This document shows, one piece after another, positions 6,401-48,268 of a DNA stretch of 64,000 nucleotides. The stretch covers positions 9,982,001 to 10,046,000 of the forward strand of contig OZ241834.1 in assembly GCA_965202585.1 (NCBI GenBank), read 5' to 3'. Made by a program: the position numbers and the translations under genes. Source of the stretch: Thalia democratica (lineage: Eukaryota). The notes under the pieces were generated by a model. The model had not been told where the DNA came from, did no database searches, and saw nothing but the letters and a program-made list of their open reading frames with translations. Numbering within the stretch: position 1 is the stretch's first letter; each line of letters begins with the position of its first letter.

Positions 6401-9400
6401 AAGTTTTATAGCCATTTAACAGCATATTTTAAATGTTTTTGGAATTAATTCAATCCTACCACTATTGTATTCCAAATTGTATATGTCAAGTTTAAAGCAC
6501 TCAAACATTTTTATAAAATTTATGAAACCACTCAAATACTATTTTTGAAGTTCATGAATGAAAAGTTTTGAAAAAACGTGAAAAAACTCTATATTTAGCT
6601 GTGCAGCTTGTACTTTTCTTAATTTTAGTATTTTTGAGTGAAATATTAAACCAATGAATTGTTTCTTGGTTTGTAACAAGACATGCAATTTTGGGACGTA
6701 AAAACAACTTTTTGATAAAATATTTAAAACCAAATTTAAAAAAGTGATATAATTATATTTTAATAATAAAAACAAACTTTGCTGGGGACAAACGAAATTG
6801 TCTTCACTGCAGTTGTCGTCCTCGACTGCAAAATTATCGAATTCTCGCATCTGTGAAAATTTCACGGTTAGTTTAAGGGTTTTTTGAAAAAAAAAGTTAA
6901 ATCAGTTTTCTTTTTTTTTTAAACGCTTTTTTATTACGTAAGTATTTTTTTAAAATTCTTGGAACTATGTCAATAAGTCTACAAGCTAGAAATAATTTGT
7001 ATTTCGGATTTTTTATTACAAACCGGTTTAAACTATTAACAATAAAAAATATAAGTAATATTACCAGTTCAATTAATTTAACTAAAAATAGAAAAAAAAA
7101 TCTTTTTTTATAAATTTTACTCATAACTTACCATGCAATCTTGTTGCAAAAACATCCCAACTGGCAAAGACTCTGTTTTTTGATTTCCTCTTTGCATCAT
7201 GTTTTTTTGACACAAATTAATTTCTTCCAGTGTCGCGTAATTTTTGAATGCATCCATGTCACTTGAATGAGAGTAACTTTGGTCTGAAATTTTATATATA
7301 TATATATATTTGCATACGTTATTCAAATTTATTTTTACATTTTAAAAATAAAAGTTACAGTAAATAAACGAGCGTTTTTAGTTAATTTAGGGTTAAGCTA
7401 TACCTGTATAAGTAGTTTAAATAATTCATAACTTAGGTTAAACTACTCATACTTTATAATTTTTTGATTTTTGTTGTTTAAATACAATAAAAGTTTAACT
7501 TAATCACATAAATCAGTCAATCTGATCTGTTTGCTTTGTGTATCGTAAAACAGTGTAAGATTTTGATGAATGAGAAAATATAAATCTCACAAAGTCAGCT
7601 TTAATGATTCATGCCCTTGAAAAGTACTTTGTGTGTAATAAATTAATTTGTGTCACATTTACAGATTATGTAAGGTGCTATTAGCAGCCTTGTGTTATAA
7701 CATCAAAGGAAAACTTGCTATCTGAGTAACGTTTAGTTTACATACTTGAGCATTATAAGTTTTGTTCAACTAATGGTTTGAACCACTAAATTAGTTTTAT
7801 TATAACGTTTACATAATTGTATTGTGTTGTTTTTATTAAAGTTGTTTAACTTTTCATTGAAAAATTGATTTCTGTTTACGTAAGTATAACTTTTAATCGT
7901 CTATCTTCTACCGTTAGAACCTCATTTATTTTTATTCACCATTATAAACGCTCGTAGAAATTTTAGCCTATTTATTATTGATAGAAACTAACCTAGCAAT
8001 CTTATCGCTTCTTCTTGATAGTTACATGTCTCATCACTATTCTCCTCAGTACAGTATCTGTTTTTGTAGTACTTTTTAACTTATTTTAAATAAACTACAG
8101 TTAATCTTTTTACTATTCAAAATTATATTAAAATAAAATAATACTGACAAGCTTTTAAATTTTTACTTGAGTCTTTTGTTGGATTTTGAAGTTTTTGTTT
8201 TAAAGCGGTTATAATCTACTATTTGAGATATTCAAATTAAAAACAAAACAAAACTTTACTTACACTTCATCATCCTTGATTTGATGGTTTTCGTTTTGTT
8301 GATAACCTTCTTCAACAAAATAATTATTTAAGTAGAAAGAATTTCTGTTTGAAACATCATCTGCTTCCACTACAACGTTCACACACCTCTTTTGTGTTTC
8401 CGCCTTGACAGGTTTCTTACCTCCGTTTGTATACCCTTTATATAAATAGACATATACGTAGATTAAACTTTTAAGTATCATCTATCATTATAATACTTAA
8501 AATGACTTTTTAGACTTTAGTTTTCGGCATTAACGAAAAATTATTCCCTACTAATATTCAAAAAGATTTGTATAAAACAAAAAAAAATTCTACAAAAAGA
8601 TTTACAAAATTAAAACAAAACAATTTAGTTTCAGGCAGAAAAATGATACCACCAAACACGAATCGTCATTAAGGGATTAAGATCTGGTAAACAAAGATAA
8701 ACAACTGTAATAATAAGTAAAAGATTTATTGGTTAATTTATAAAAACTGTCACACGCTTTTTTAAGTGTTTGCAAATAATCATTAGGCTTTAATGACGTT
8801 ATCTAGTAAAAATTTTGACTAAAATCACATTATCTTAACTAATCGTTTACTTAAAAATAACAGCGTCACGAAATCGTAGGAACATGGCTTTTATTTATTT
8901 GTAAATTATCTTAACTTAGCGGATACTTTTAAAACTGAAATACAAGTAAAAAAGCAATTAATAAAAAAGTAGTACTTTAAGTAAATTTTTAACCAGTAGT
9001 TTTCAAAAATGAAAGTTTAATTTTCCTCTTTTCCGATCTTTTAAACAAATTTTCATTCAAGTTTCTAGAAACATTTTGATTACACACTATTTGATGAATA
9101 CTTAGTAAAGCCTAATTCATTTCAGTTTTCGTAATATTTGCTTATTCAAAAGTGTTTAAAATCACTTGTAACGTTGTCGATTTCCGTCGAAGACCAGCCA
9201 CGATTTTTGAACCTCGAGTTTTGCTGGCTTTTGATTGGACGTTCTTCTGTTTCGTGAAAAACGTCTTCACTTTCCGATTCGCTCTCCACCTGCTTCTTGC
9301 TGTTTGTTTCCACATCTTCATACACCTTCACTGCCATCTTCGGTTTCATCTCGTCGGTTCCATGCGGTTCGCAGTTCATTTTCCCGCTACAGTCGGAATG

Positions 9401-31010: not shown

Positions 31011-34000
31011 TCATCTAAATGAATTCACCACTGATCTTACGTTTTCTACGCAATTAAAAACCATATTAGGATCATTATAAACAAAATTAATCAGTTTGTA
31101 TCCTCCGAAAGCCAACACTCCGAGTAGAACTCCTCCTAAAACCATGCCTTCGCGCTGCGCTTTCAACAAAAACTTGTCTGTTTCCATCAGTTCCTTGAGA
31201 ATTGCGCCTTTCTTGTTTTTGTGTGGAAACGGCGTGTCTGGGACTGGCACCCCTAAAAACTCGCACAGTGGCTTCCAACCTTTTTTGAAGTCCACAATGT
31301 GAAGTTTGTCTTTTGGAGCTTTCTGTGTATGATTATGTTGAGTGCTTTTTTTATAGGTTTTGGAAAAGTAAAAAGCTTTGTTTAACTTAATAATAAACAT
31401 TCCTTATTACATCATGTGTTTATTATAAGATTCTACTTTTTATAAGAAATTGAAACACAGAAAAAAAAAACTAATACATATAAGTTAAGGACGTAAAGCG
31501 GTCTACTAATTACTTAAAAAATTATTATATCTTTAATATTTAACATTTTGAAAGGTAAATTAAGGTGATTTTTTTCTAGTATTTCACTACAACCAACTAA
31601 AACAAATTAGAGCCGAATGACAGTGTAAGTTTATATTACAAAACTTCAAAAGTTCTAGGATGAGACTGAAATAAGTTTCAACTTTTATAAAAGCCTACTA
31701 ATATAATTTATTTAAAACTTTCATGTTTTTATTAAAAATATTAATAGTTAATTAAAACAACTATATAGTAAGAAACCATCCTTTTATTTTAACCTACTTT
31801 AAAGGATTCCTTTTATACGCAATAAATAAGAACAAATAACAGTATACAATGACAAACAAACCTCAAGAACATAAAATTAAAAATTGTTGCATAAAACTAC
31901 AATAAGTTATAACTTTTATAAAGCCTCTCTATTATGATTTATTTAAAATTGTTCTTTTTTTTAAACCTTAGTTTTTAATAAAACAACCATGTAATGGGAA
32001 ACAACAACTTTTAATCTACACTTTGTAAACGATGCCTTAATTATTTATAAGTAAGAACAAATAACAGTATACAATGACAAACAAACCTCAAGAACATAGG
32101 CATTGTGTTTTCTGTATGACTGTCTACATAAAAGTTCACTGTACTTACAACCACCGAACCAATGCTGTGTGAAATTTATTCCAAAACAAATCTTTCCTTA
32201 TAATATGTAAATAATAGTTTAATAAACTTAATTGAGCCTTTTAACTAAAAGAAACTATCTACAAATCACATGTCTTGTTTAAACAAAAGTATTTCGTAAA
32301 GTCAAACGATAAAAGCAGTAAAAGACAAAAATAATTTATCCTGCGCTTCTTTTTAAAAGTAGTACTAGTTTTTAAAGGTATGAAGTAAAAAAAAGATTTA
32401 TGTTAAAAAAACAGCTTATGTTCAGTTTGACATAAAAAATTTATGGAGTGTAAAACATGAATGAATAGTATTTATTAAATTTTGTACCATTTACTTACTT
32501 GCTTTATCTAAGTTAATTGCCTTAAATAAAATATTTAAAAAAAACCTATTTTAAGACCATAACGATTCATGAGCCACAGTCTTGGTGAGATCATCATTAT
32601 AAGTGTAACTAAAGGATGGGTTTGAACTTGAAGCTGTTTGTCAAAACTTTTAAACCATTCATCTTCAGTAGCACGTTGTCCAAATATTATCTAAACAGTT
32701 TTTGTACTAATTTAGAAAATCAAATTCTACATATTTTCATTGAAAAGTGTGTTTAAAAGTATATTTCAAATAACTTAAGGGTATATTTAAACTTTTTGTA
32801 AACAAAAAAATTGTGTGCGTAGTAATACATAAAAAACAAATATTTCCAGGGAGATATATCGCTTATCTGTAGAAAAAGTAATTTACGCAAAAAAATATAT
32901 ATAACTGTAACAAAATATGCATTTTGTTGTATTTTAAATGACCGCAAAGGGACGTTAGACGATTTTATATCAAATTACACAACAAAACTTTAAAAATGTT
33001 TGTTATAATTAGTGATGTACCGGACTCACTATCTGGGTCCGGGTCCGGCCGGATAGCCATTTTTATCTGATATCCGGATCCGGCCGGACCCTAATTTGAA
33101 AAAAAAGTCCGGATCCGGTTCCGGTCGGATTCTAATTTGAAAAAAAAGTCCGGATCCGGTTCCGGCCGGATTCTAATTTGAAAAAAAAGTCCGGACCCGG
33201 ATCTAGTTAGTAGAAAAGAGCATACTGAAAAGTATTTTTTCAAAAACAAACCCTGTGTAAATTAATAAGAGTCATTTTTGTCAGTTAAAATTAAACACCT
33301 ACCGTGATTGGCTCATTTTGTACACGTGACTAATTTACATTTGTTTACATTTAAACTTTGAAATAAACATTTCAGAAATGCAACTCTTTACATTTGTGGT
33401 AAAATTGAAAACTTTAGAATGAATACTTGCATAATTTATTGGTTAAAGTTGAGCTCAGAGAATATTTAGAGTTAATACGGTTGAATGTACGAGCCAATGA
33501 GAATCATATGACGAAATGTTTCAAACTAAATACTGATGCAACAAAACATCAGAACACGACAGGCAGTTTATATGTAAGCAGTTAGTTAGTTTGGTGTGCA
33601 GCTTGAAGCAACAAAATATCTTGAACTTTTTTGTGAAATTTTGTGATAAGTGAATATTTCAACTGGTGTTTTATTGTTTTAATATTTAAGCCAGGTTTAT
33701 AGTTTAAATAGTTTATTAAAAATTTTACAGTATCTTGTTTACTAAAATTTTTATTTAATTTTTAGTTTATTGTTTTAAGTCTTTTGATATAGATTTAAAT
33801 AGCTTCCAGTTTTTAAAGTGTTACCAAAGTAATTAATAATTTTGTATATGCTAGTATTTCTTGTTGTATTTTATATAAAAGATTCATCACTCAAAACTGT
33901 CGTGTCTGATTATAGAAAGTAGTCTCAGTTAGAATTTAGTATTTGTTAGATATTAATTAAATAAGGTAGGATTTAATGATGATCGGTAGTACTAATAAGT

Positions 34001-35934
34001 AAAGTGTACCACAATCAGTCCACAACTTTACTACCAAATTGTCAACCTTTACTAGCTGTTCTACTGATTATTAGATTAAAGTAATTTTTTCAGTTTTTTA
34101 AAACCTCATTCTGACTCAGGCTTGTTTATACTCACTCTAGCTAGTTTTATTGACTAAAACAGTGGCAACTCTGCTAGTTTGAAAAATTTTAGGAATGTTA
34201 GGAAATCTTGGACTGCCTCAAAGCTAGTTTAGTTTTTTTAAAAAGTTCAGGCTAGTTTTCTTTTAAATTTTGAATGAGTTTGAGCTTATCCAGTTTTCAA
34301 TATTTGGTAATTTTCTAGTATATTTGGTTCAAGAACTTGATTTCAGATTTTTAGTTGTAAATAAAACCTAAATTTTTAAACCTTGTGGCTAGCTGTTCTA
34401 CTTATTATTAGATTAAAGTTCTTTTTTTTTCTCATTCTGACTCAGGCTAGTTTATACTAGTGATGTACCGGACTCACTATCCGGGTCCGGGTCCGGCCGG
34501 ATATTGCCATTTTTGTCTGATATCCGGATCCGGCCGGATTCTAATTTGAAAAAAAAGTCCGGATCCGGTTCCGGCCGGATTCTAATTTGAAAAAAAAGTC
34601 TGGATCCGGTTCCGGCCGGATTCTAATTTGAAAAAAAAGTCCGGGTCCGGTTCCGGCCGGATTCTAACTTGAAAAAAAAGTCCGGATCCGGGTCCGGTAC
34701 ATCACTAGTTATAATGCTCATTAGCCTGTAGCTCGTGCACTACGCGCAGCTCGATATGTTGTTCGTTATTTTTGTTTTTGGCTCAGTTAGCCATAAGATC
34801 GTGCAAAAAGCACACTAATTTTAAGAACTTAAGACACTGATTGAATTTAAGAACTTTGTTATGATTGTCATTTTATAAGAACTTTATGTTTATTTGTATT
34901 ACTGTATTGTAATCTGCTCAGTTAAGCCATAAGACCGTGCGAGACGCACACGAAATTATTATAAGAACTTTTTTATTATTTTCGTTCTATAAGATCTTGA
35001 TGCTTATTTGCGTTATTGTGTTATATTGTGCTTAGTTTAACCATCGTTGTTCATGAAGCACGATATATATGAAGACTCTGTATTATTAGTACTTTTATTA
35101 GTAAGAACTATTTTAGTATTTAAGATTTTAAACACTTTAAGAACATTTCTATTTGTAGAACTTTGTTTTTATTTGTTGTGTTTATATTCGCAGTTTTATT
35201 CAACTGATTTATTAGCTGCTTTATCATTTCTACTTCCTAATTTTCACATTAACATCACGTTTTGAATAAACTCACTTCATTAAAAAAATTATATATATTA
35301 AGCTTATTACATACTTATTAACTACTAAGTTAAACCTAATGAGTAAGGTAAATTCAGTAAAAATCTCAAAGCTAAACGCGCTAAGTGTTTAGCACAAAAA
35401 GGGGACTTCCCCCAATTAAAGGTAGTTCCTACCTCAGGTCCTCTAGGACTACATAATTACTTCCTAAAAGTGGACGATATTGTCTCTAAAATTAGCCATT
35501 ACTAATTTTAAATACTTTTTTCTCACTGTTTATGGCAAACTTACAACACTCAGAGAGTTTTTAACTTCTTTTTTAAAATTATAATGAAGAAGGTAAAGCA
35601 TATGTACTTCATAAGTTTTTTTTTAATTTAATGAAAGCAAAATAATAGTTTTTTTTACATAAAAAACTAAATTTTTATTTACTTTAGCTTCAGGGAATGC
35701 TTCGTGTATATCTTCCCAAAAAACACAACCAGGTACGTCCATTATTGCATCAACATCTTCAAACATCCTTCGAAAATCTTCAACTGATCCACCTTGGTCG
35801 AAAATCTTTTGCCACTCGTCCCCAAGATAAACATAGTTTTCAATGTAGTCATAACATTTAAAACCTAGCTCAGTCAGAGCTGCATTGATGGTTTTAGTTC
35901 CTGTTTTCGGAAAACCAGCGTATATAACTTTCAT
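31011..35934 (-). CDS. P-loop sulfotransferase (Sulfotransfer_4-like), copy A, 272 aa, with C-terminal hydrophobic anchor
   Basis: Exons 35683-35934, 32546-32690, 32087-32196, 31011-31322 (819 nt, phases 0/1/0). N-terminal PAPS-binding loop KVIYAGFPKTGT, DVP..F.E..EAFP.AK, and C-terminal GWKPLCEFLGVPVPDTPFPHKN are typical of this family. TM-like segment GMVLGGVLLGVLAFGGYKLI. Confidence 0.88.
33010..34707. mobile_element. Composite hAT element: truncated MITE (33010-33203) + about 1.25 kb cargo + complete MITE (34458-34707)
   Basis: 15-bp TIR TAGTGATGTACCGGA at 33010, 34458 and (reverse) 34707. The 8-bp TSD GTTATAAT flanks the whole unit (33002-33009, 34708-34715). Both MITE copies contain 41-bp tandem repeats (ccggccggattctaatttgaaaaaaaagtccggatccggtt). 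Confidence 0.88.
33290..33520. promoter_or_regulatory. Promoter-like cargo with CCAAT boxes and an E-box
   Basis: gattggct (about 33307), cacgtgac (about 33322), tattggtt (about 33438), agccaatga (about 33492). Motif-only evidence. Confidence 0.35.
34708..35279. mobile_element. Possible solo LTR (would start TGTTATAAT at 33001, interrupted by the composite hAT element)
   Basis: TG start; internal direct repeats (gctcagtta(a)gccataaga-cgtgc twice; many taagaac); AATAAA then CA near 35279. Absent from the paralogous intron. No TSD confirmed. Confidence 0.35.
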
Positions 35935-45277: not shown

Positions 45278-48268
45278 ATGAAAGTTATATACGCTGGTTT
45301 CCCAAAAACTGGAACTAAAACCATTAATGCAGCTCTGACCGAGCTAGGTTTTAAATGTTATGACTACATTGAAAACTATGTTTATCTTGGAGACGAGTGG
45401 CAAAAGATTTTCGACCAAGGTGGATCAGTTGAAGATTTTCGAAGGATGTTTGAAGATGTTGATGCAATAATGGACGTACCTGGTTGTGTTTTTTGGGAAG
45501 ATATTCACGAAGCATTCCCTGATGCTAAAGTAGATTTAAAATTTTTAATTTTTATGTAAAAAAGAGTACTTTGCTTTTATTAAATTAAAAAAAACACAAA
45601 ATAATTCTAGATACTATAGGTTCTTCATAATAAAAGTTCTACTAACTCTCTGAGTAATTTTTGTAAATTTGCCATAAAAGATAAATAAGAAATTTAGTCC
45701 TTGAAAACGTAATTTCCACTTTAAGATGCAGTATCGTCCACTATAGAAAGTTATTTTTTAGCACAGTTATTTTCTACTTTAACGGGAGATATAGATAATT
45801 TAAAATATTTGTTTTTATTGTATTACGACAAACAAATCTTATTTTTAAAGCTTTACAAAAGGGTAGATTATGCCAATTCGATTATCAGACCACAAGTTTC
45901 GGTAGATTGAGACCGGTTTCGTCCTTATTAGGACTCATCAGTCAGTCACAACTGCAAAACTTGCAGTTGTCAATCTACAAACGGTATATGATGATTTCAC
46001 ATAAAGCTACCATTTGCTGGCAATGATCTGTGACGTCAGAATTGTCTTTGCCGTGCAACGTTTAAAACATTGTCCACTAGGCAAGACATCTGGTACGCTC
46101 GTTTTAGAACGATCAACAGAAAACAGACTTTCGCTGATGTTTTCTGTTGATCGTTATAAAACGAGCGTACCAGATGTCTTGCCTAGTGGACAATGTTTTA
46201 AACGTTGCACGGCAAAGACAATTCTGACGTCACATATCATTGCCAGCAAATGGTAGCTTTATGTGAAAGCATCATATACCGTTTGTAGGTTGACAACCGC
46301 AATTTTTGCGGTTGTGACTGACTGATGAGTCCTAATAAGGACGAAACCGGTCTCAGTCTACCGAAACTTGTGGTCTGATGATCGAACTGGCATGATCAAC
46401 CCTTTTGTTAAACTTGAGCTTGTCTCATGGCAAACAAAAGTCCAAGCTTCTGCCATGCAGATTTTCGCCGATGTTTTCTGTTTTAAAGCTTTATTACACC
46501 CTTAAGTTACTTGATATATACTTTGAAATACACTTTTCAATGGAAATGTTTAGAATTTCATTTTATAAATTAGTACAAAAACTGTTTAGATAATATTTGG
46601 ACAACGTGCTACTGAAGATGAATGGTTTAAAAGCTTCGACAACCAGCTTCAAACAAACACTCATCCTTTAGTTACACTTATAATGATGATCTCACCAAGA
46701 CTGTGGCTCATGAATCGTTATGGTCTTAAATTAGGTTTTTCTCATTTACTTAAAACAATCAAATTAGCTGTAAAGTAAATTAGTAAATAATCAAAAACTT
46801 AACAAACATGATTTTTTTTGGTACACTTGAAGAATGTATTATGTAAAATTAAACATAAGCAATTTTTTAACCTAAAACTTTATTTAATTTTTTTTTACTT
46901 AATACCTTTGAAATCCAGAATTTGTGTAAAAGGAACCGCAGGATAAGATAATTTTGTCTTTTACCGCTTTTATCATTTGACTTTACCTAAAAGTTTCGTT
47001 AAAAAGCAATATATGCTTTTTAGATTGCTTATTTTAGTAAAATAATTTAATTAACTTTTTTCTAGCAAAGATTTGTTTTGGAATAAATTTCACACAGTAT
47101 TGGTTCGGTGGTTGTAAGTACAGTGAACTTTTATGTAGACAGTCATACAGAAAACACAATGCTTATGTTCTTGAGGTTTGTTTGTCATTGTATACTGTTA
47201 TTTGTTCTTACTTATAAATAATTAAGGCATCGTTTACAAAGTGTAGATTAAAAGTTGTTGTTTCCCATTACATGGTTGTTTTATTAAAAACTAAGGTTTA
47301 AAAAAAAGAACAATTTTAAATAAATCATAATAGAGAGGCTTTATAAAAGTTATAACTTATTGTAGTTTTATGCAACAATTTTTAATTTTTATTGCTGGTC
47401 ACTTAGTACAAAAACTTTTTACTTATGTATTTAACCAGTTGATCTCTTAATTGATTTTTTTATTAAGTTAAAAGTATTAATTAAACTCTCTACTTAAACT
47501 CTTACTTATTTTTAAAGGTTTAAGAACTAAGTATTTATTATTCGGTATTCAAACTTAATTTTTTTTTGTTTTTGTTTTAAATATCTAATGTAAATCTTTT
47601 TTTTTTATAAATAATACATAGTATAAACTAACACTCTCATTCTCCATTAGTTTATTGCAGTAATTTTTCAAAAAAACAGGTGTTTAGAAATATTTAAAAT
47701 TGAAACTGTTTTGTTTTAGTTTACCTCTTAAAATGTTAGTAATAAAAATTATGATCATTTTCAAATTGCATAGTAGACTGCTTAACGTCCTTAACCAATA
47801 TGTATCAGTTTAAATTTTTCACTGATTCTACTTGTTATATAAAATAGAATTTTATAACAATTATTCGATGCAATTACGAATATTTAATAATATCTAAATA
47901 AAGCTTTTTACTTTTCCAAAACCTATAAAAAAAACACTCAACATAATCATACACAGAAAGCTCCAAAAGACAAACTTCACATTGTGGACTTCAAAAAAGG
48001 TTGGAAGCCACTGTGCGAGTTTTTAGGGGTGCCAGTCCCAGACACGCCGTTTCCACACAAAAACAAGAAAGGCGCAATTCTCAAGGAACTGATGGAAACA
48101 GACAAGTTTTTGTTGAAAGCGCAGCGCGAAGGCATGGTTTTAGGAGGAGTTCTACTCGGAGTGTTGGCTTTTGGAGGGTACAAACTGATTAATTTTGTTT
48201 ATAATGATCCTGATGTGGTTTTTAATTGCGTAGACAATGTAAAATCAGTATTGAATTCATTTAGCTAA
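45278..48268 (+). CDS. P-loop sulfotransferase (Sulfotransfer_4-like), copy B, 272 aa
   Basis: Exons 45278-45529, 46590-46734, 47066-47175, 47957-48268, the same lengths as copy A; 13 amino-acid differences by manual count. Confidence 0.88.
45905..45947 (-). ncRNA. Type I hammerhead ribozyme, minus strand
   Basis: Reverse complement reads GACTGA-CTGATGA-GTCCtaataaGGAC-GAAAC-CG-GTC-TCAATC: the core is identical and stem I has one mismatch. Confidence 0.85.
46316..46358 (+). ncRNA. Type I hammerhead ribozyme, plus strand
   Basis: Stem I GACTGA (46316-46321) / TCAGTC (46353-46358); core CTGATGA (46322-46328); stem II GTCC-taataa-GGAC; GAAA (46343-46346); 2-bp helix III within palindromic ACCGGT; cleavage triplet GTC (46350-46352). 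Confidence 0.9.

What the first reader, a model, noticed from the sequence alone, without database searches (positions are those of the whole stretch)
45856..46480. Palindromic, dual-polarity hammerhead-ribozyme element: a 334-nt retrozyme/Penelope-like monomer inserted as a foldback
Seen: a 625-bp insertion with a 13-bp TSD (TTTTAAAGCTTTA), missing from the paralogous intron and with no credible ORF. It is an inverted partial copy (45856-46125), then a full 334-nt unit (46124-46457), then the first 23 nt of the next unit (46458-46480). The result is a 271-bp-armed hairpin with a complete type I hammerhead on each strand (+ 46316-46358, - 45905-45947), both pointing outward. Established: minimal type I hammerheads with a 2-bp palindromic helix III (here ACCGGT) are characteristic of Penelope-like pLTRs and animal non-LTR retrozymes, and they cleave as dimers. 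Inverted truncated pLTR plus partial tandem repeat is the typical Penelope insertion layout. Inference: this is a non-autonomous self-cleaving RNA family, probably producing an approximately 334-nt (possibly circular) RNA mobilised in trans. Here it is arranged so that transcripts of either polarity are rod-like and ribozyme-bearing, which is viroid-like. Whether this family is already catalogued cannot be judged without a search.
Basis: partly seen in the sequence, partly recalled or inferred. Interest (0 to 1): 0.92.

Follow-up and report, generated by a model that had tools for sequence, protein, structure and literature searches.

The report
Ordinary hammerhead retrozyme insertion, Penelope-style
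This is one routine, probably inert copy of a family of over 2,000 small non-coding mobile elements carrying a self-cleaving hammerhead ribozyme; its hairpin shape is the normal scar of how the family inserts, not a viroid-like design.

Summary
A 625-bp insertion with a perfect 13-bp TSD lies in intron 1 of a sulfotransferase gene and is missing from the paralogous intron. It has an inverted 270-278-nt arm, one 334-nt unit, 23 nt of the next unit, and a type I hammerhead core on each strand.

It is not special. The genome holds at least 2,279 copies of this ribozyme core. In 18 of 23 sampled loci the family forms the same head-to-head foldback, with 13-14-bp TSDs. One outer end falls at unit position ~280-285 and the other ~74 nt further on. 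The window copy fits this exactly.

A resident Penelope-like element (RT plus C-terminal GIY-YIG) leaves the same scars: inverted pairs, 13-16-bp TSDs and a ~68-nt one-sided tail. It has no hammerhead and no similarity to the unit.

This is therefore a new member of a known kind, the animal non-LTR retrozymes, proposed to be non-autonomous Penelope derivatives.

This locus has only one ribozyme per strand, each buried in a hairpin of about -495 kcal/mol. It cannot release a unit-length or circular RNA. The viroid-like reading is not supported.

Earlier follow-ups of this scan reached the same verdict on other copies of this family in the same genome.

The parts
45843..45855 (.). Left copy of the 13-bp target-site duplication TTTTAAAGCTTTA
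   Evidence: D4, 100% identical; family TSDs are 13-14 bp
45856..46125 (-). Inverted, 5'-truncated copy (unit positions ~284 down to 15). Its 3' end (terminus T1) abuts the left TSD.
45905..45947 (-). Minus-strand hammerhead copy. The core is intact; helix I is weakened by G-to-A changes at unit positions 233 and 187.
46126..46137 (+). 12-nt centre of the foldback (unit positions 3-14), where the 5' ends of the two arms meet; it forms the hairpin loop
46124..46457 (+). One full 334-nt unit of the repeat family (GC 0.43 against 0.22 in the surrounding intron)
46316..46358 (+). Plus-strand type I hammerhead: helix I GACUGA/UCAGUC, helix II GUCC/GGAC, helix III ACCGGU palindrome. Predicted cut after C46352.
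46458..46480 (+). First 23 nt of the next unit. This is the family's long terminus (T2), the one-sided ~74-nt 'tail'.
46481..46493 (.). Right copy of the 13-bp TSD
45530..46589 (+). Host intron 1 (GT..AG) of a Sulfotransfer_4 gene: 1,060 nt with the insertion, 422 nt without. Exon 1 ends at 45529 and exon 2 starts at 46590.
   Evidence: (spliced RNA contig joins 45529 to 46590)
32587..32845 (-). Paralogous empty site in the other arm of the inverted gene duplication

Best explanation
The 625-bp element is a single, moderately old insertion of a non-autonomous, non-coding retroelement of the animal non-LTR retrozyme kind.

Inferred life cycle of the family:
1. Tandem arrays are transcribed by read-through.
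2. Neighbouring minimal hammerheads pair through their ACCGGU helix III and cut after C17.
3. This releases ~328/335-nt monomers whose ends are held together by an extended helix I.
4. A host ligase may then circularise them.

Integration is carried out in trans by a Penelope-like RT/GIY-YIG enzyme. A staggered cut of 13-14 bp gives the TSD. Both target 3' ends prime reverse transcription at fixed sites on a template longer than one unit (multimeric or circular). The two cDNAs meet 5'-end to 5'-end at a variable point. This produces a head-to-head foldback with 3' ends facing outwards and a ~70-nt extension on one side.

The foldback in the window is this scar. Here it is functionally inert as a ribozyme source, because each strand has one hammerhead and that hammerhead is locked in a ~270-bp duplex. 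It is simply spliced out with the intron.

Shown here: the anatomy, copy number, family-wide scars, the matching scars of a resident Penelope-like element, hammerhead covariation, and the intron position.

Inferred only: cleavage, circularisation, which enzyme mobilises the family, and the dual-priming mechanism.
For: - Family size and arrays: 2,157 first-look candidates and 128 scored matches, with tandem periods of 328 and 335 nt. There are 2,279 exact hammerhead cores against 0 for the reversed control pattern.
- Layout: 18 of 23 distinct loci have both orientations, always minus copies then plus copies, each with its own central junction. The 15 mixed clusters in the first 100 core hits are all in that order.
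- Scars: TSDs are 13-14 bp in most loci. Of 16 insertions with clear TSDs, 15 have a terminus at unit position 279-285. In 14 of those the other terminus is at ~20-27 of the next unit, and in one (L005) both ends are at 284. The window copy has 284 and 23.
[quoted passage not shown] Five of five inverted pairs have one short and one long terminus about 68 nt apart, with TSDs of 13, 13, 14, 14 and 16 bp.
- Hammerhead fold: 96.7% of cells are paired against 21-48% when partners are slid, and 4 pairs carry changes on both sides across variant families.
- Dimer requirement: the monomer prefers a non-ribozyme fold (-20.6 against -16.3 kcal/mol), while the ACCGGU duplex in trans gives -9.7 kcal/mol.
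- Array monomers fold with their ends paired, z -4.8 and -4.1.
- Subfamily differences: both arms share 14 differences from the family majority, none in positions 186-292, which hold the ribozyme and the 3' module. Thirteen differences are private to one arm and one site differs in all three (about 2-3% per arm).
- The unit plus tail exceeds one unit, so the template was longer than a monomer.
- Literature: PMC7229834, PMC4209133, PMC8557442, PMC7761336, and bioRxiv 10.64898/2026.07.22.740005.
Against: - No self-cleavage, 5'/3' ends or circular junctions could be observed. All available runs are stored as contigs, and family sequence in RNA libraries could be DNA carry-over.
- The sampled Penelope-like elements share no sequence with the unit and carry no hammerhead. 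The partner is therefore inferred from scars only. A rarer ribozyme-bearing Penelope-like element was not excluded, and 5' UTRs could not be fetched.
- The insertion termini (positions ~284 and ~23) do not coincide with the ribozyme cut site (position 229). A cleaved linear monomer is therefore not the direct template.
- The Rfam score is below the gathering threshold.
Confidence: 0.82

Rival explanations
1. The foldback is a functional, viroid-like, dual-polarity ribozyme element: transcripts of either strand are rod-like, self-cleave, and give a ~334-nt (circular) RNA from this locus.
For: A hammerhead core lies on each strand. The whole element folds as a rod. Family sequence occurs in metatranscriptome contigs.
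Against: - Each strand has one hammerhead, so at most one cut is possible and no unit-length product.
- The ribozyme needs a second copy to form helix III (PMC4209133).
- In the transcript it is paired to a perfect antisense made earlier (-495 kcal/mol).
- The minus copy has a weakened helix I.
- The unit's antisense strand has no ribozyme of its own.
- The element is integrated DNA with a TSD, and its shape is the family default.
Confidence: 0.04
2. The insertion matters mainly as a long intronic hairpin. Host pre-mRNA carries a ~270-bp perfect duplex that is diced into small RNAs against the family, or that perturbs splicing of the sulfotransferase gene. This is a by-product function and does not exclude the main explanation.
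For: The element lies in intron 1 on the gene's sense strand, 96 nt upstream of exon 2. It forms an extremely stable hairpin. Foldbacks are common in this genome, so many such hairpins would be transcribed.
Against: No small-RNA data could be examined. The intron is removed correctly in the one spliced RNA contig seen, although that contig may come from an allele or sister species without the insertion. No selection signal was found: the arms have drifted apart by about 5%.
Confidence: 0.1
3. It is a foldback or MITE-type DNA transposon with ~270-bp terminal inverted repeats and a 13-bp TSD, and it carries a hammerhead only by chance of descent.
For: It has long inverted arms flanked by a TSD.
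Against: - The central junction differs at every locus and arms hold 0.2 to more than 4 units.
- The two outer ends are not each other's reverse complement (T1 against T2).
- Five of 23 loci have no inverted arm.
- Copy depth rises towards the 3' part of the unit, as expected for 5'-truncated cDNA copies.
- An RT-encoding element in the same genome leaves the same scars.
Confidence: 0.03
4. It is an assembly artefact, such as a palindromic chimera of long reads.
For: Foldbacks are a known artefact class.
Against: The arms differ at 14 of 278 sites. The TSD is perfect and an empty paralogous site exists. Independent short contigs bridge both junctions exactly. The same layout recurs at many loci with different junctions.
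Confidence: 0.01

Closest known systems
Metazoan non-LTR retrozymes (Cervera & de la Pena 2020, PMC7229834; review PMC7761336)
   Same: - Non-coding tandem repeats of ~330 nt, each with a type I hammerhead.
- GC below 50%, and no LTR, PBS or PPT.
- TSDs longer than 4 bp and thousands of copies.
- The monomer is predicted to be compact and self-paired.
- A weak, palindromic helix III, as in the amphibian 330/350-bp repeats that cleave as dimers.
   Different: Circular RNA is not shown here. The head-to-head inverted arms, fixed T1/T2 termini and 13-14-bp TSDs documented here are not described in that paper, where the word 'inverted' does not occur. The host species is undisclosed, and neither 'tunicate' nor 'urochordate' occurs in the paper's text.
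Penelope-like elements and their pseudo-LTR hammerheads (Cervera & de la Pena 2014, PMC4209133; Craig et al. 2021, PMC8557442)
   Same: The insertion architecture matches: an inverted 5'-truncated copy, a partial tandem and a one-sided tail. The hammerhead is minimal and dimer-dependent. The same scars are seen on a resident RT/GIY-YIG element.
   Different: The element has no ORF. The tail is ~70 nt rather than the published 30-40 bp. The resident Penelope-like elements that were sampled carry no hammerhead and share no sequence with the unit.
Retrozymes as non-autonomous derivatives of Penelope-like elements (Li, Clavereau & Pollet 2026, bioRxiv 10.64898/2026.07.22.740005)
   Same: The conclusion is the same: retrozymes ride on Penelope-like element machinery.
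   Different: Their evidence is co-occurrence and pLTR sequence phylogeny in vertebrates. Here the evidence is matching integration scars without any sequence relationship. They report depletion from introns, whereas this copy is intronic.
Hammerhead viroids and viroid-like satellite RNAs (Avsunviroidae)
   Same: A small rod-like RNA fold with hammerheads readable on both strands, and a dimer-dependent helix III.
   Different: Those are autonomous RNA replicons without a DNA stage, and each polarity has its own ribozyme. Here one ribozyme sits in two inverted DNA copies with a TSD, and the unit's antisense strand has none.
L1 twin-priming inversions
   Same: The two target strands each appear to prime cDNA synthesis, giving an inverted, 5'-truncated segment within one TSD. 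I draw this comparison from general knowledge; no paper on it was read here.
   Different: A different enzyme family. Here both arms start at fixed 3' sites and inversion is the rule rather than the exception.

Membership tests
Hammerhead ribozyme, type I | Conserved core CUGANGA ... GAAA ... UH with the cleavage site after position 17 | tested here: met
   The sequence was read directly. An identical 31-mer lies on both strands. My descriptor scan finds the plus copy.
Hammerhead ribozyme, type I | Helices I and II flank the core, helix I is open-ended, and both are supported by covariation | tested here: met
   96.7% of cells are paired, 4 pairs change on both sides, and slid controls give 21-48%.
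Hammerhead ribozyme, type I | Score at or above Rfam's gathering threshold | tested here: not met
   HH9 scores 35.4 and 30.4 bits against 52, and the window has no match at gathering level. This is expected for variants with a minimal helix III.
Hammerhead ribozyme, type I | Self-cleavage | not testable with these tools
   Needs in vitro transcription of monomer and dimer constructs.
Metazoan non-LTR retrozyme | Short (150-400 nt) non-coding tandem repeats, each with a type I hammerhead | tested here: met
   Arrays have a 328/335-nt period with C17 sites every 328 or 335 nt. At this locus there are only 1.07 direct units plus 0.8 of an inverted unit.
Metazoan non-LTR retrozyme | No ORF, LTR, PBS or PPT; GC below 50%; TSD longer than 4 bp | tested here: met
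   No credible ORF and no RT similarity. GC is 0.43. TSDs are 13-14 bp. PBS and PPT were not searched for specifically.
Metazoan non-LTR retrozyme | Expressed as unit-length linear and circular RNA | tested here: inconclusive
   Family pieces of 58-230 nt occur in metatranscriptome contigs. Contigs show no ends or circles, and DNA carry-over is not excluded.
Penelope-like element (autonomous) | ORF with a telomerase-like RT and a GIY-YIG endonuclease | tested here: not met
   tblastn of the resident element's ORF against 40 hammerhead-bearing loci and the window gave no hit. The element is therefore non-autonomous at best.
Penelope-like element (insertion signature) | Inverted 5'-truncated copy, partial tandem, one-sided tail and a TSD | tested here: met
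   Seen in the family and in the resident RT/GIY-YIG element. Described in PMC8557442.
Penelope-like element (derivative of a resident pLTR) | Sequence similarity between the unit and the 3' region or pLTR of a Penelope-like element in the same genome | tested here: not met
   No similarity to 30 GIY-YIG loci. No hammerhead in 96.6 kb of those loci. Only elements reached by the GIY-YIG search were sampled, and their 5' UTRs were not seen.
Viroid-like dual-polarity ribozyme RNA | Each polarity of one RNA carries its own ribozyme, with RNA-to-RNA replication and no DNA stage | tested here: not met
   The unit's antisense strand has no Rfam match at E<=10. The element is chromosomal with a TSD and an empty paralogous site.
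Foldback/MITE DNA transposon | Fixed terminal inverted repeats that are the same in all copies | tested here: not met
   Junctions and arm lengths vary and the T1/T2 ends are asymmetric.

The most novel reading that the evidence does not exclude
In this genome the hammerhead elements may be an independent lineage that parasitises ribozyme-less Penelope-like elements. On this reading the enzyme recognises them without any shared 3' sequence and itself sets the ~70-nt one-sided tail and the 13-14-bp stagger. The obligatory head-to-head product would let promoter-less arrays yield sense, ribozyme-bearing RNA whichever way they are read through, while single-unit foldbacks like this one become intronic dsRNA hairpins that feed silencing of the family.
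Probability: 0.2. Interest if true: 0.55.

Novelty: new member of a known kind. Interest (0 to 1): 0.25.

Why it matters
For this locus, very little: it is a decaying copy in an intron.

For the family, the clean and repeated scars give structural evidence that animal retrozymes are integrated by Penelope-type RT/GIY-YIG enzymes. The scars are a 13-14-bp TSD, fixed T1/T2 termini about 74 nt apart and obligatory head-to-head arms, and a coding Penelope-like element in the same genome mirrors them. This complements the distribution and phylogeny arguments published so far.

The sampled Penelope-like elements lack hammerheads. That bears on the open question of whether the ribozymes serve these elements or merely ride on them.

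The fixed termini, away from the cleavage site, together with insertions longer than one unit, constrain models of the template RNA. It must be multimeric or circular, with internal initiation.

Tried and rejected
1. Search for an autonomous parent.
- A GIY-YIG (PF01541) search of the genome gave 69 matches, mostly one Penelope-like family.
- None of the 30 loci fetched contains the unit or a hammerhead, by BLAST, by regex, by Rfam at E<=1 and by my own descriptor.
- Ten loci holding other hammerhead variants, 10 kb each, have no RT. Their open frames give no RT or endonuclease Pfam domain.

2. My first genome pattern search used the wrong spacer (14 N instead of 12) and found only 4 length variants. 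It was corrected.

3. Ribozyme conservation within the family. The minor-allele fraction is 0.011 in the ribozyme against 0.035 elsewhere. This is weak evidence: the copies are young and array-homogenised, and other segments are equally conserved.

4. Read laying. Only contigs were available, so there is no information on RNA ends, strand or circles. No table of places where molecules begin or end was produced.

5. A circular-fold script with shuffles timed out. It was replaced by linear folds of array monomers.

6. A literal search for the ribozyme sequence in the paper library found 0 papers. Repbase and Dfam could not be searched, so whether the family has a catalogue name remains unknown.

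7. Lunse et al. 2017, on dimeric Penelope-like element hammerheads, is not held in the library.

8. The microRNA-family hits (MIR1515, MIR2587, mir-5918, mir-785) were rejected. They are generic matches to a long perfect hairpin, all far below gathering scores.
Full report
WHAT IS THERE

Window 45856-46480 is a 625-bp block flanked by a perfect 13-bp direct repeat, TTTTAAAGCTTTA, at 45843-45855 and 46481-46493.
- Inside, arms 45848-46125 and 46138-46415 are 278 nt long and 95% complementary, with a 12-nt spacer.
- Positions 46124-46148 recur at 46458-46482, 334 nt further on, at 92% identity.
- A 31-nt hammerhead core occurs identically at 46322-46352 (+) and 45911-45941 (-). None is expected by chance.
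- Rfam's best model is Hammerhead_HH9, at 35.4 and 30.4 bits. Both are significant but below the gathering score of 52. That is usual for variants whose helix III is only A-U and C-G around a 2-nt loop, the palindrome ACCGGU.
- The microRNA-family hits are generic responses to a long perfect hairpin.
- There is no credible ORF. GC is 0.42-0.43, against 0.22 in the surrounding intron.

HOST CONTEXT

- The block lies in intron 1 of a plus-strand Sulfotransfer_4 gene. Exon 1 (from 45278) matches profile positions 1-93, and the next exon matches positions 94-135.
- A 521-nt contig from a marine metatranscriptome joins 45529 to 46590 across a GT..AG intron. The intron is 1,060 nt with the insertion and 422 nt without it, and the right TSD ends 96 nt before exon 2.
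- The gene belongs to an inverted segmental duplication. Left flank, one TSD copy and right flank align without interruption to the other arm (about 32587-32845, reverse strand, 86% identity). The paralogue is therefore an empty site.
- Short contigs from an organism-A run bridge both insertion junctions with no differences.

THE FAMILY

- A genome search with the 334-nt unit gave 2,157 first-look candidates and 128 scored matches at about 89-97% identity (91-93% for near-full-length copies). Many sit in tandem arrays with periods of 328 or 335 nt.
- The pattern CTGATGAG-N12-CGAAACCGGTC occurs 2,279 times in the 802-Mb genome. The reversed control pattern occurs 0 times.
- Of 23 distinct loci examined, 18 contain copies in both orientations. 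In all 18 the minus-strand copies lie to the left of the plus-strand copies. The 5' ends therefore meet in the centre and the 3' ends and ribozymes point outwards, and each locus has its own central junction.
- The same order holds for all 15 mixed clusters among the first 100 core matches on chromosome 1.
- Most insertions carry 13-14-bp TSDs.
- Of 16 insertions with clear TSDs, 15 have a terminus at unit position 279-285 (T1). In 14 of those the other terminus lies at about 20-27 of the next unit (T2), or at the equivalent 320+35 nt in the 328-nt subfamily, roughly 74 nt further on. In one (L005) both ends are T1.
- The window copy has T1 at 284 on the left, T2 at 23 on the right, and a 13-bp TSD.

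It is a textbook member, and its 'palindromic, dual-polarity' shape is the family's default.

WHO MAKES SUCH INSERTIONS

[quoted passage not shown] This is a canonical endonuclease-positive Penelope-like element, with many 5'-truncated copies and many head-to-head pairs.
- Its copies end at one of two places about 68 nt apart.
- In five of five inverted pairs, one end is short and the other long, and the pair is flanked by a TSD of 13, 13, 14, 14 or 16 bp.

These are the same three scars as in the ribozyme family. They match the published description of Penelope-like insertions: an inverted 5'-truncated copy, a partial tandem and a one-sided tail (PMC8557442). The tail here is about 70 nt rather than 30-40.

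There is, however, no sequence link.
- The unit has no similarity to 30 GIY-YIG loci.
- Those 96.6 kb contain no hammerhead by regex, by Rfam at E<=1, or by a structural descriptor that does recover the window's ribozyme.
- Two more divergent Penelope-like lineages also lack one.
- Conversely, no RT remnant lies near any of 40 ribozyme-bearing loci.
- Full-length copies could not be fetched to inspect their 5' UTRs.

Mobilisation by a Penelope-type enzyme is therefore well supported by scars. The specific partner remains unproven.

IS THE HAMMERHEAD REAL?

- All core nucleotides are present.
- Other hammerhead families in the genome differ in helix I (GACUGA/UCAGUC against CCUGC/GUAGG) and in helix II (GUCC/GGAC against GUUU/GAAC).
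- On an alignment of ten sequences, 96.7% of cells are paired against 21-48% when partners are slid, and four pairs carry changes on both sides.
- A single motif prefers a non-ribozyme fold (-20.6 against -16.3 kcal/mol). Two ACCGGU segments form a 6-bp duplex worth -9.7 kcal/mol.
- This fits the published view that such weak, palindromic helix III variants act as dimers in tandem transcripts (PMC4209133, PMC7229834, PMC7761336).
- Ribozyme-delimited monomers from arrays (L022:1264-1591:-, L030:1602-1936:-) fold compactly with 5' and 3' ends paired, z -4.8 and -4.1. This suits ligation into a circle.

WHAT THIS LOCUS CAN AND CANNOT DO

- Each strand has one hammerhead. Two in the same orientation are needed to excise a unit, so no ~334-nt RNA can come from here.
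- The full transcript folds into a hairpin of about 270 bp (-495 kcal/mol, z -51), in which each ribozyme is paired to its antisense. In the host pre-mRNA the antisense arm is made first.
- The minus-strand copy also has two G-to-A changes in helix I.
- The unit's own antisense strand has no ribozyme, so there is no true dual polarity.

AGE

- Both arms share 14 differences from the family majority. All lie in positions 16-185 and none in 186-292, the region that holds the ribozyme and the 3' module.
- Thirteen further differences are private to one arm, and one site differs in all three. This gives roughly 2-3% divergence per arm since insertion.
- The insertion is much younger than the gene duplication, whose introns are 79-86% identical.

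RNA EVIDENCE

- Four metatranscriptome runs hold 30-36% of the unit's sampled words, and five coded organisms hold 24-46%.
- Laid on the locus, RNA contigs of 58-230 nt cover the family parts but not the unique intron. All data are contigs, so ends, strand and circles cannot be seen, and DNA carry-over from about 2,300 copies cannot be excluded.

COMPARISON AND VERDICT

The element meets the tested defining features of animal non-LTR retrozymes (PMC7229834), except for demonstrated circular RNA. It also carries the Penelope insertion signature (PMC8557442), in line with the recent proposal that retrozymes are non-autonomous Penelope derivatives (bioRxiv 10.64898/2026.07.22.740005). It fails the tests for a viroid-like replicon and for a foldback DNA transposon.

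Notes of this scan show that hammerhead elements were flagged many times in this genome (332 notes match the word). Two earlier follow-ups on other copies reached the same verdict.

It is a new member of a known kind and of low interest as a locus. The modest added value is twofold: the quantitative match of scars between the ribozyme family and a ribozyme-less Penelope-like element, and the fixed termini that do not coincide with the cleavage site.

Noticed in passing
L032 (G000:C1:2656678-2659893); pairs L046/L047, L049/L050, L057/L058, L059/L060, L043/L044: An abundant canonical Penelope-like element (RVT_1 plus C-terminal GIY-YIG) has two alternative 3' ends ~68 nt apart and 13-16-bp TSDs. 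It has no hammerhead within 1.5 kb of the endonuclease domain. Published work states that canonical Penelope-like elements carry hammerheads in their pLTRs.
   Followed up: partly
L034 and L041: Two further Penelope-like lineages (about 34-51% and 27-35% amino-acid identity to the abundant one) also show no hammerhead in the 1.5 kb fetched on either side of the GIY-YIG match.
   Followed up: partly
G000:C1 7203438/7203567, 7212582/7212711, 8506129/8506258, 8849624/8849753: Four inverted hammerhead pairs share exactly the same 129-nt spacing. One particular foldback seems to have been copied several times, by segmental duplication or by re-mobilisation of a foldback.
   Followed up: no
L064:7381-7451, L065:7265-7366, L068:7340-7411 and 7743-7777, L069:7109-7179: A second hammerhead family has a covarying helix I (CCUGC/GUAGG). 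It shares only unit positions ~170-229 with this family. Its sequence also appears as loose ends of RNA-library contigs at 46318 and 46352.
   Followed up: partly
window 46298 / 46310 and mirror positions in the left arm (unit positions 175 / 187): These two positions pair in a small hairpin just 5' of the ribozyme that overlaps distal helix I. The family majority has U.G, the plus arm C-G and the minus arm U-A. Both arms turned the wobble into a Watson-Crick pair in different ways, which could be chance.
   Followed up: partly
window 32795-35449: The paralogous arm of the inverted FABP/sulfotransferase duplication carries about 2.65 kb of extra sequence in the corresponding intron, where another reader noted a hAT-type composite.
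   Followed up: no
L014 (G000:C444:1-2408) and L015 (G000:C8:54069775-54073104): Both show the same retrozyme insertion with an identical internal layout in opposite orientation. The small contig is probably a haplotig of the chromosome 8 locus.
   Followed up: no
window 46334-46441 against 46118-46279: In the organism-A contig set, summed depth over the 3' part of the unit is several-fold higher than over the 5' part. This fits many 5'-truncated copies. The tool warns that contig depth is not a reliable measure.
   Followed up: no
window 45470-45577 and 46550-46765: A marine metatranscriptome contig carries the correctly spliced exon 1-exon 2 junction of this sulfotransferase gene with 5 differences in 145 nt. 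It is closer to this gene than to its paralogue, so this animal or a close relative is present in open-water plankton samples.
   Followed up: partly
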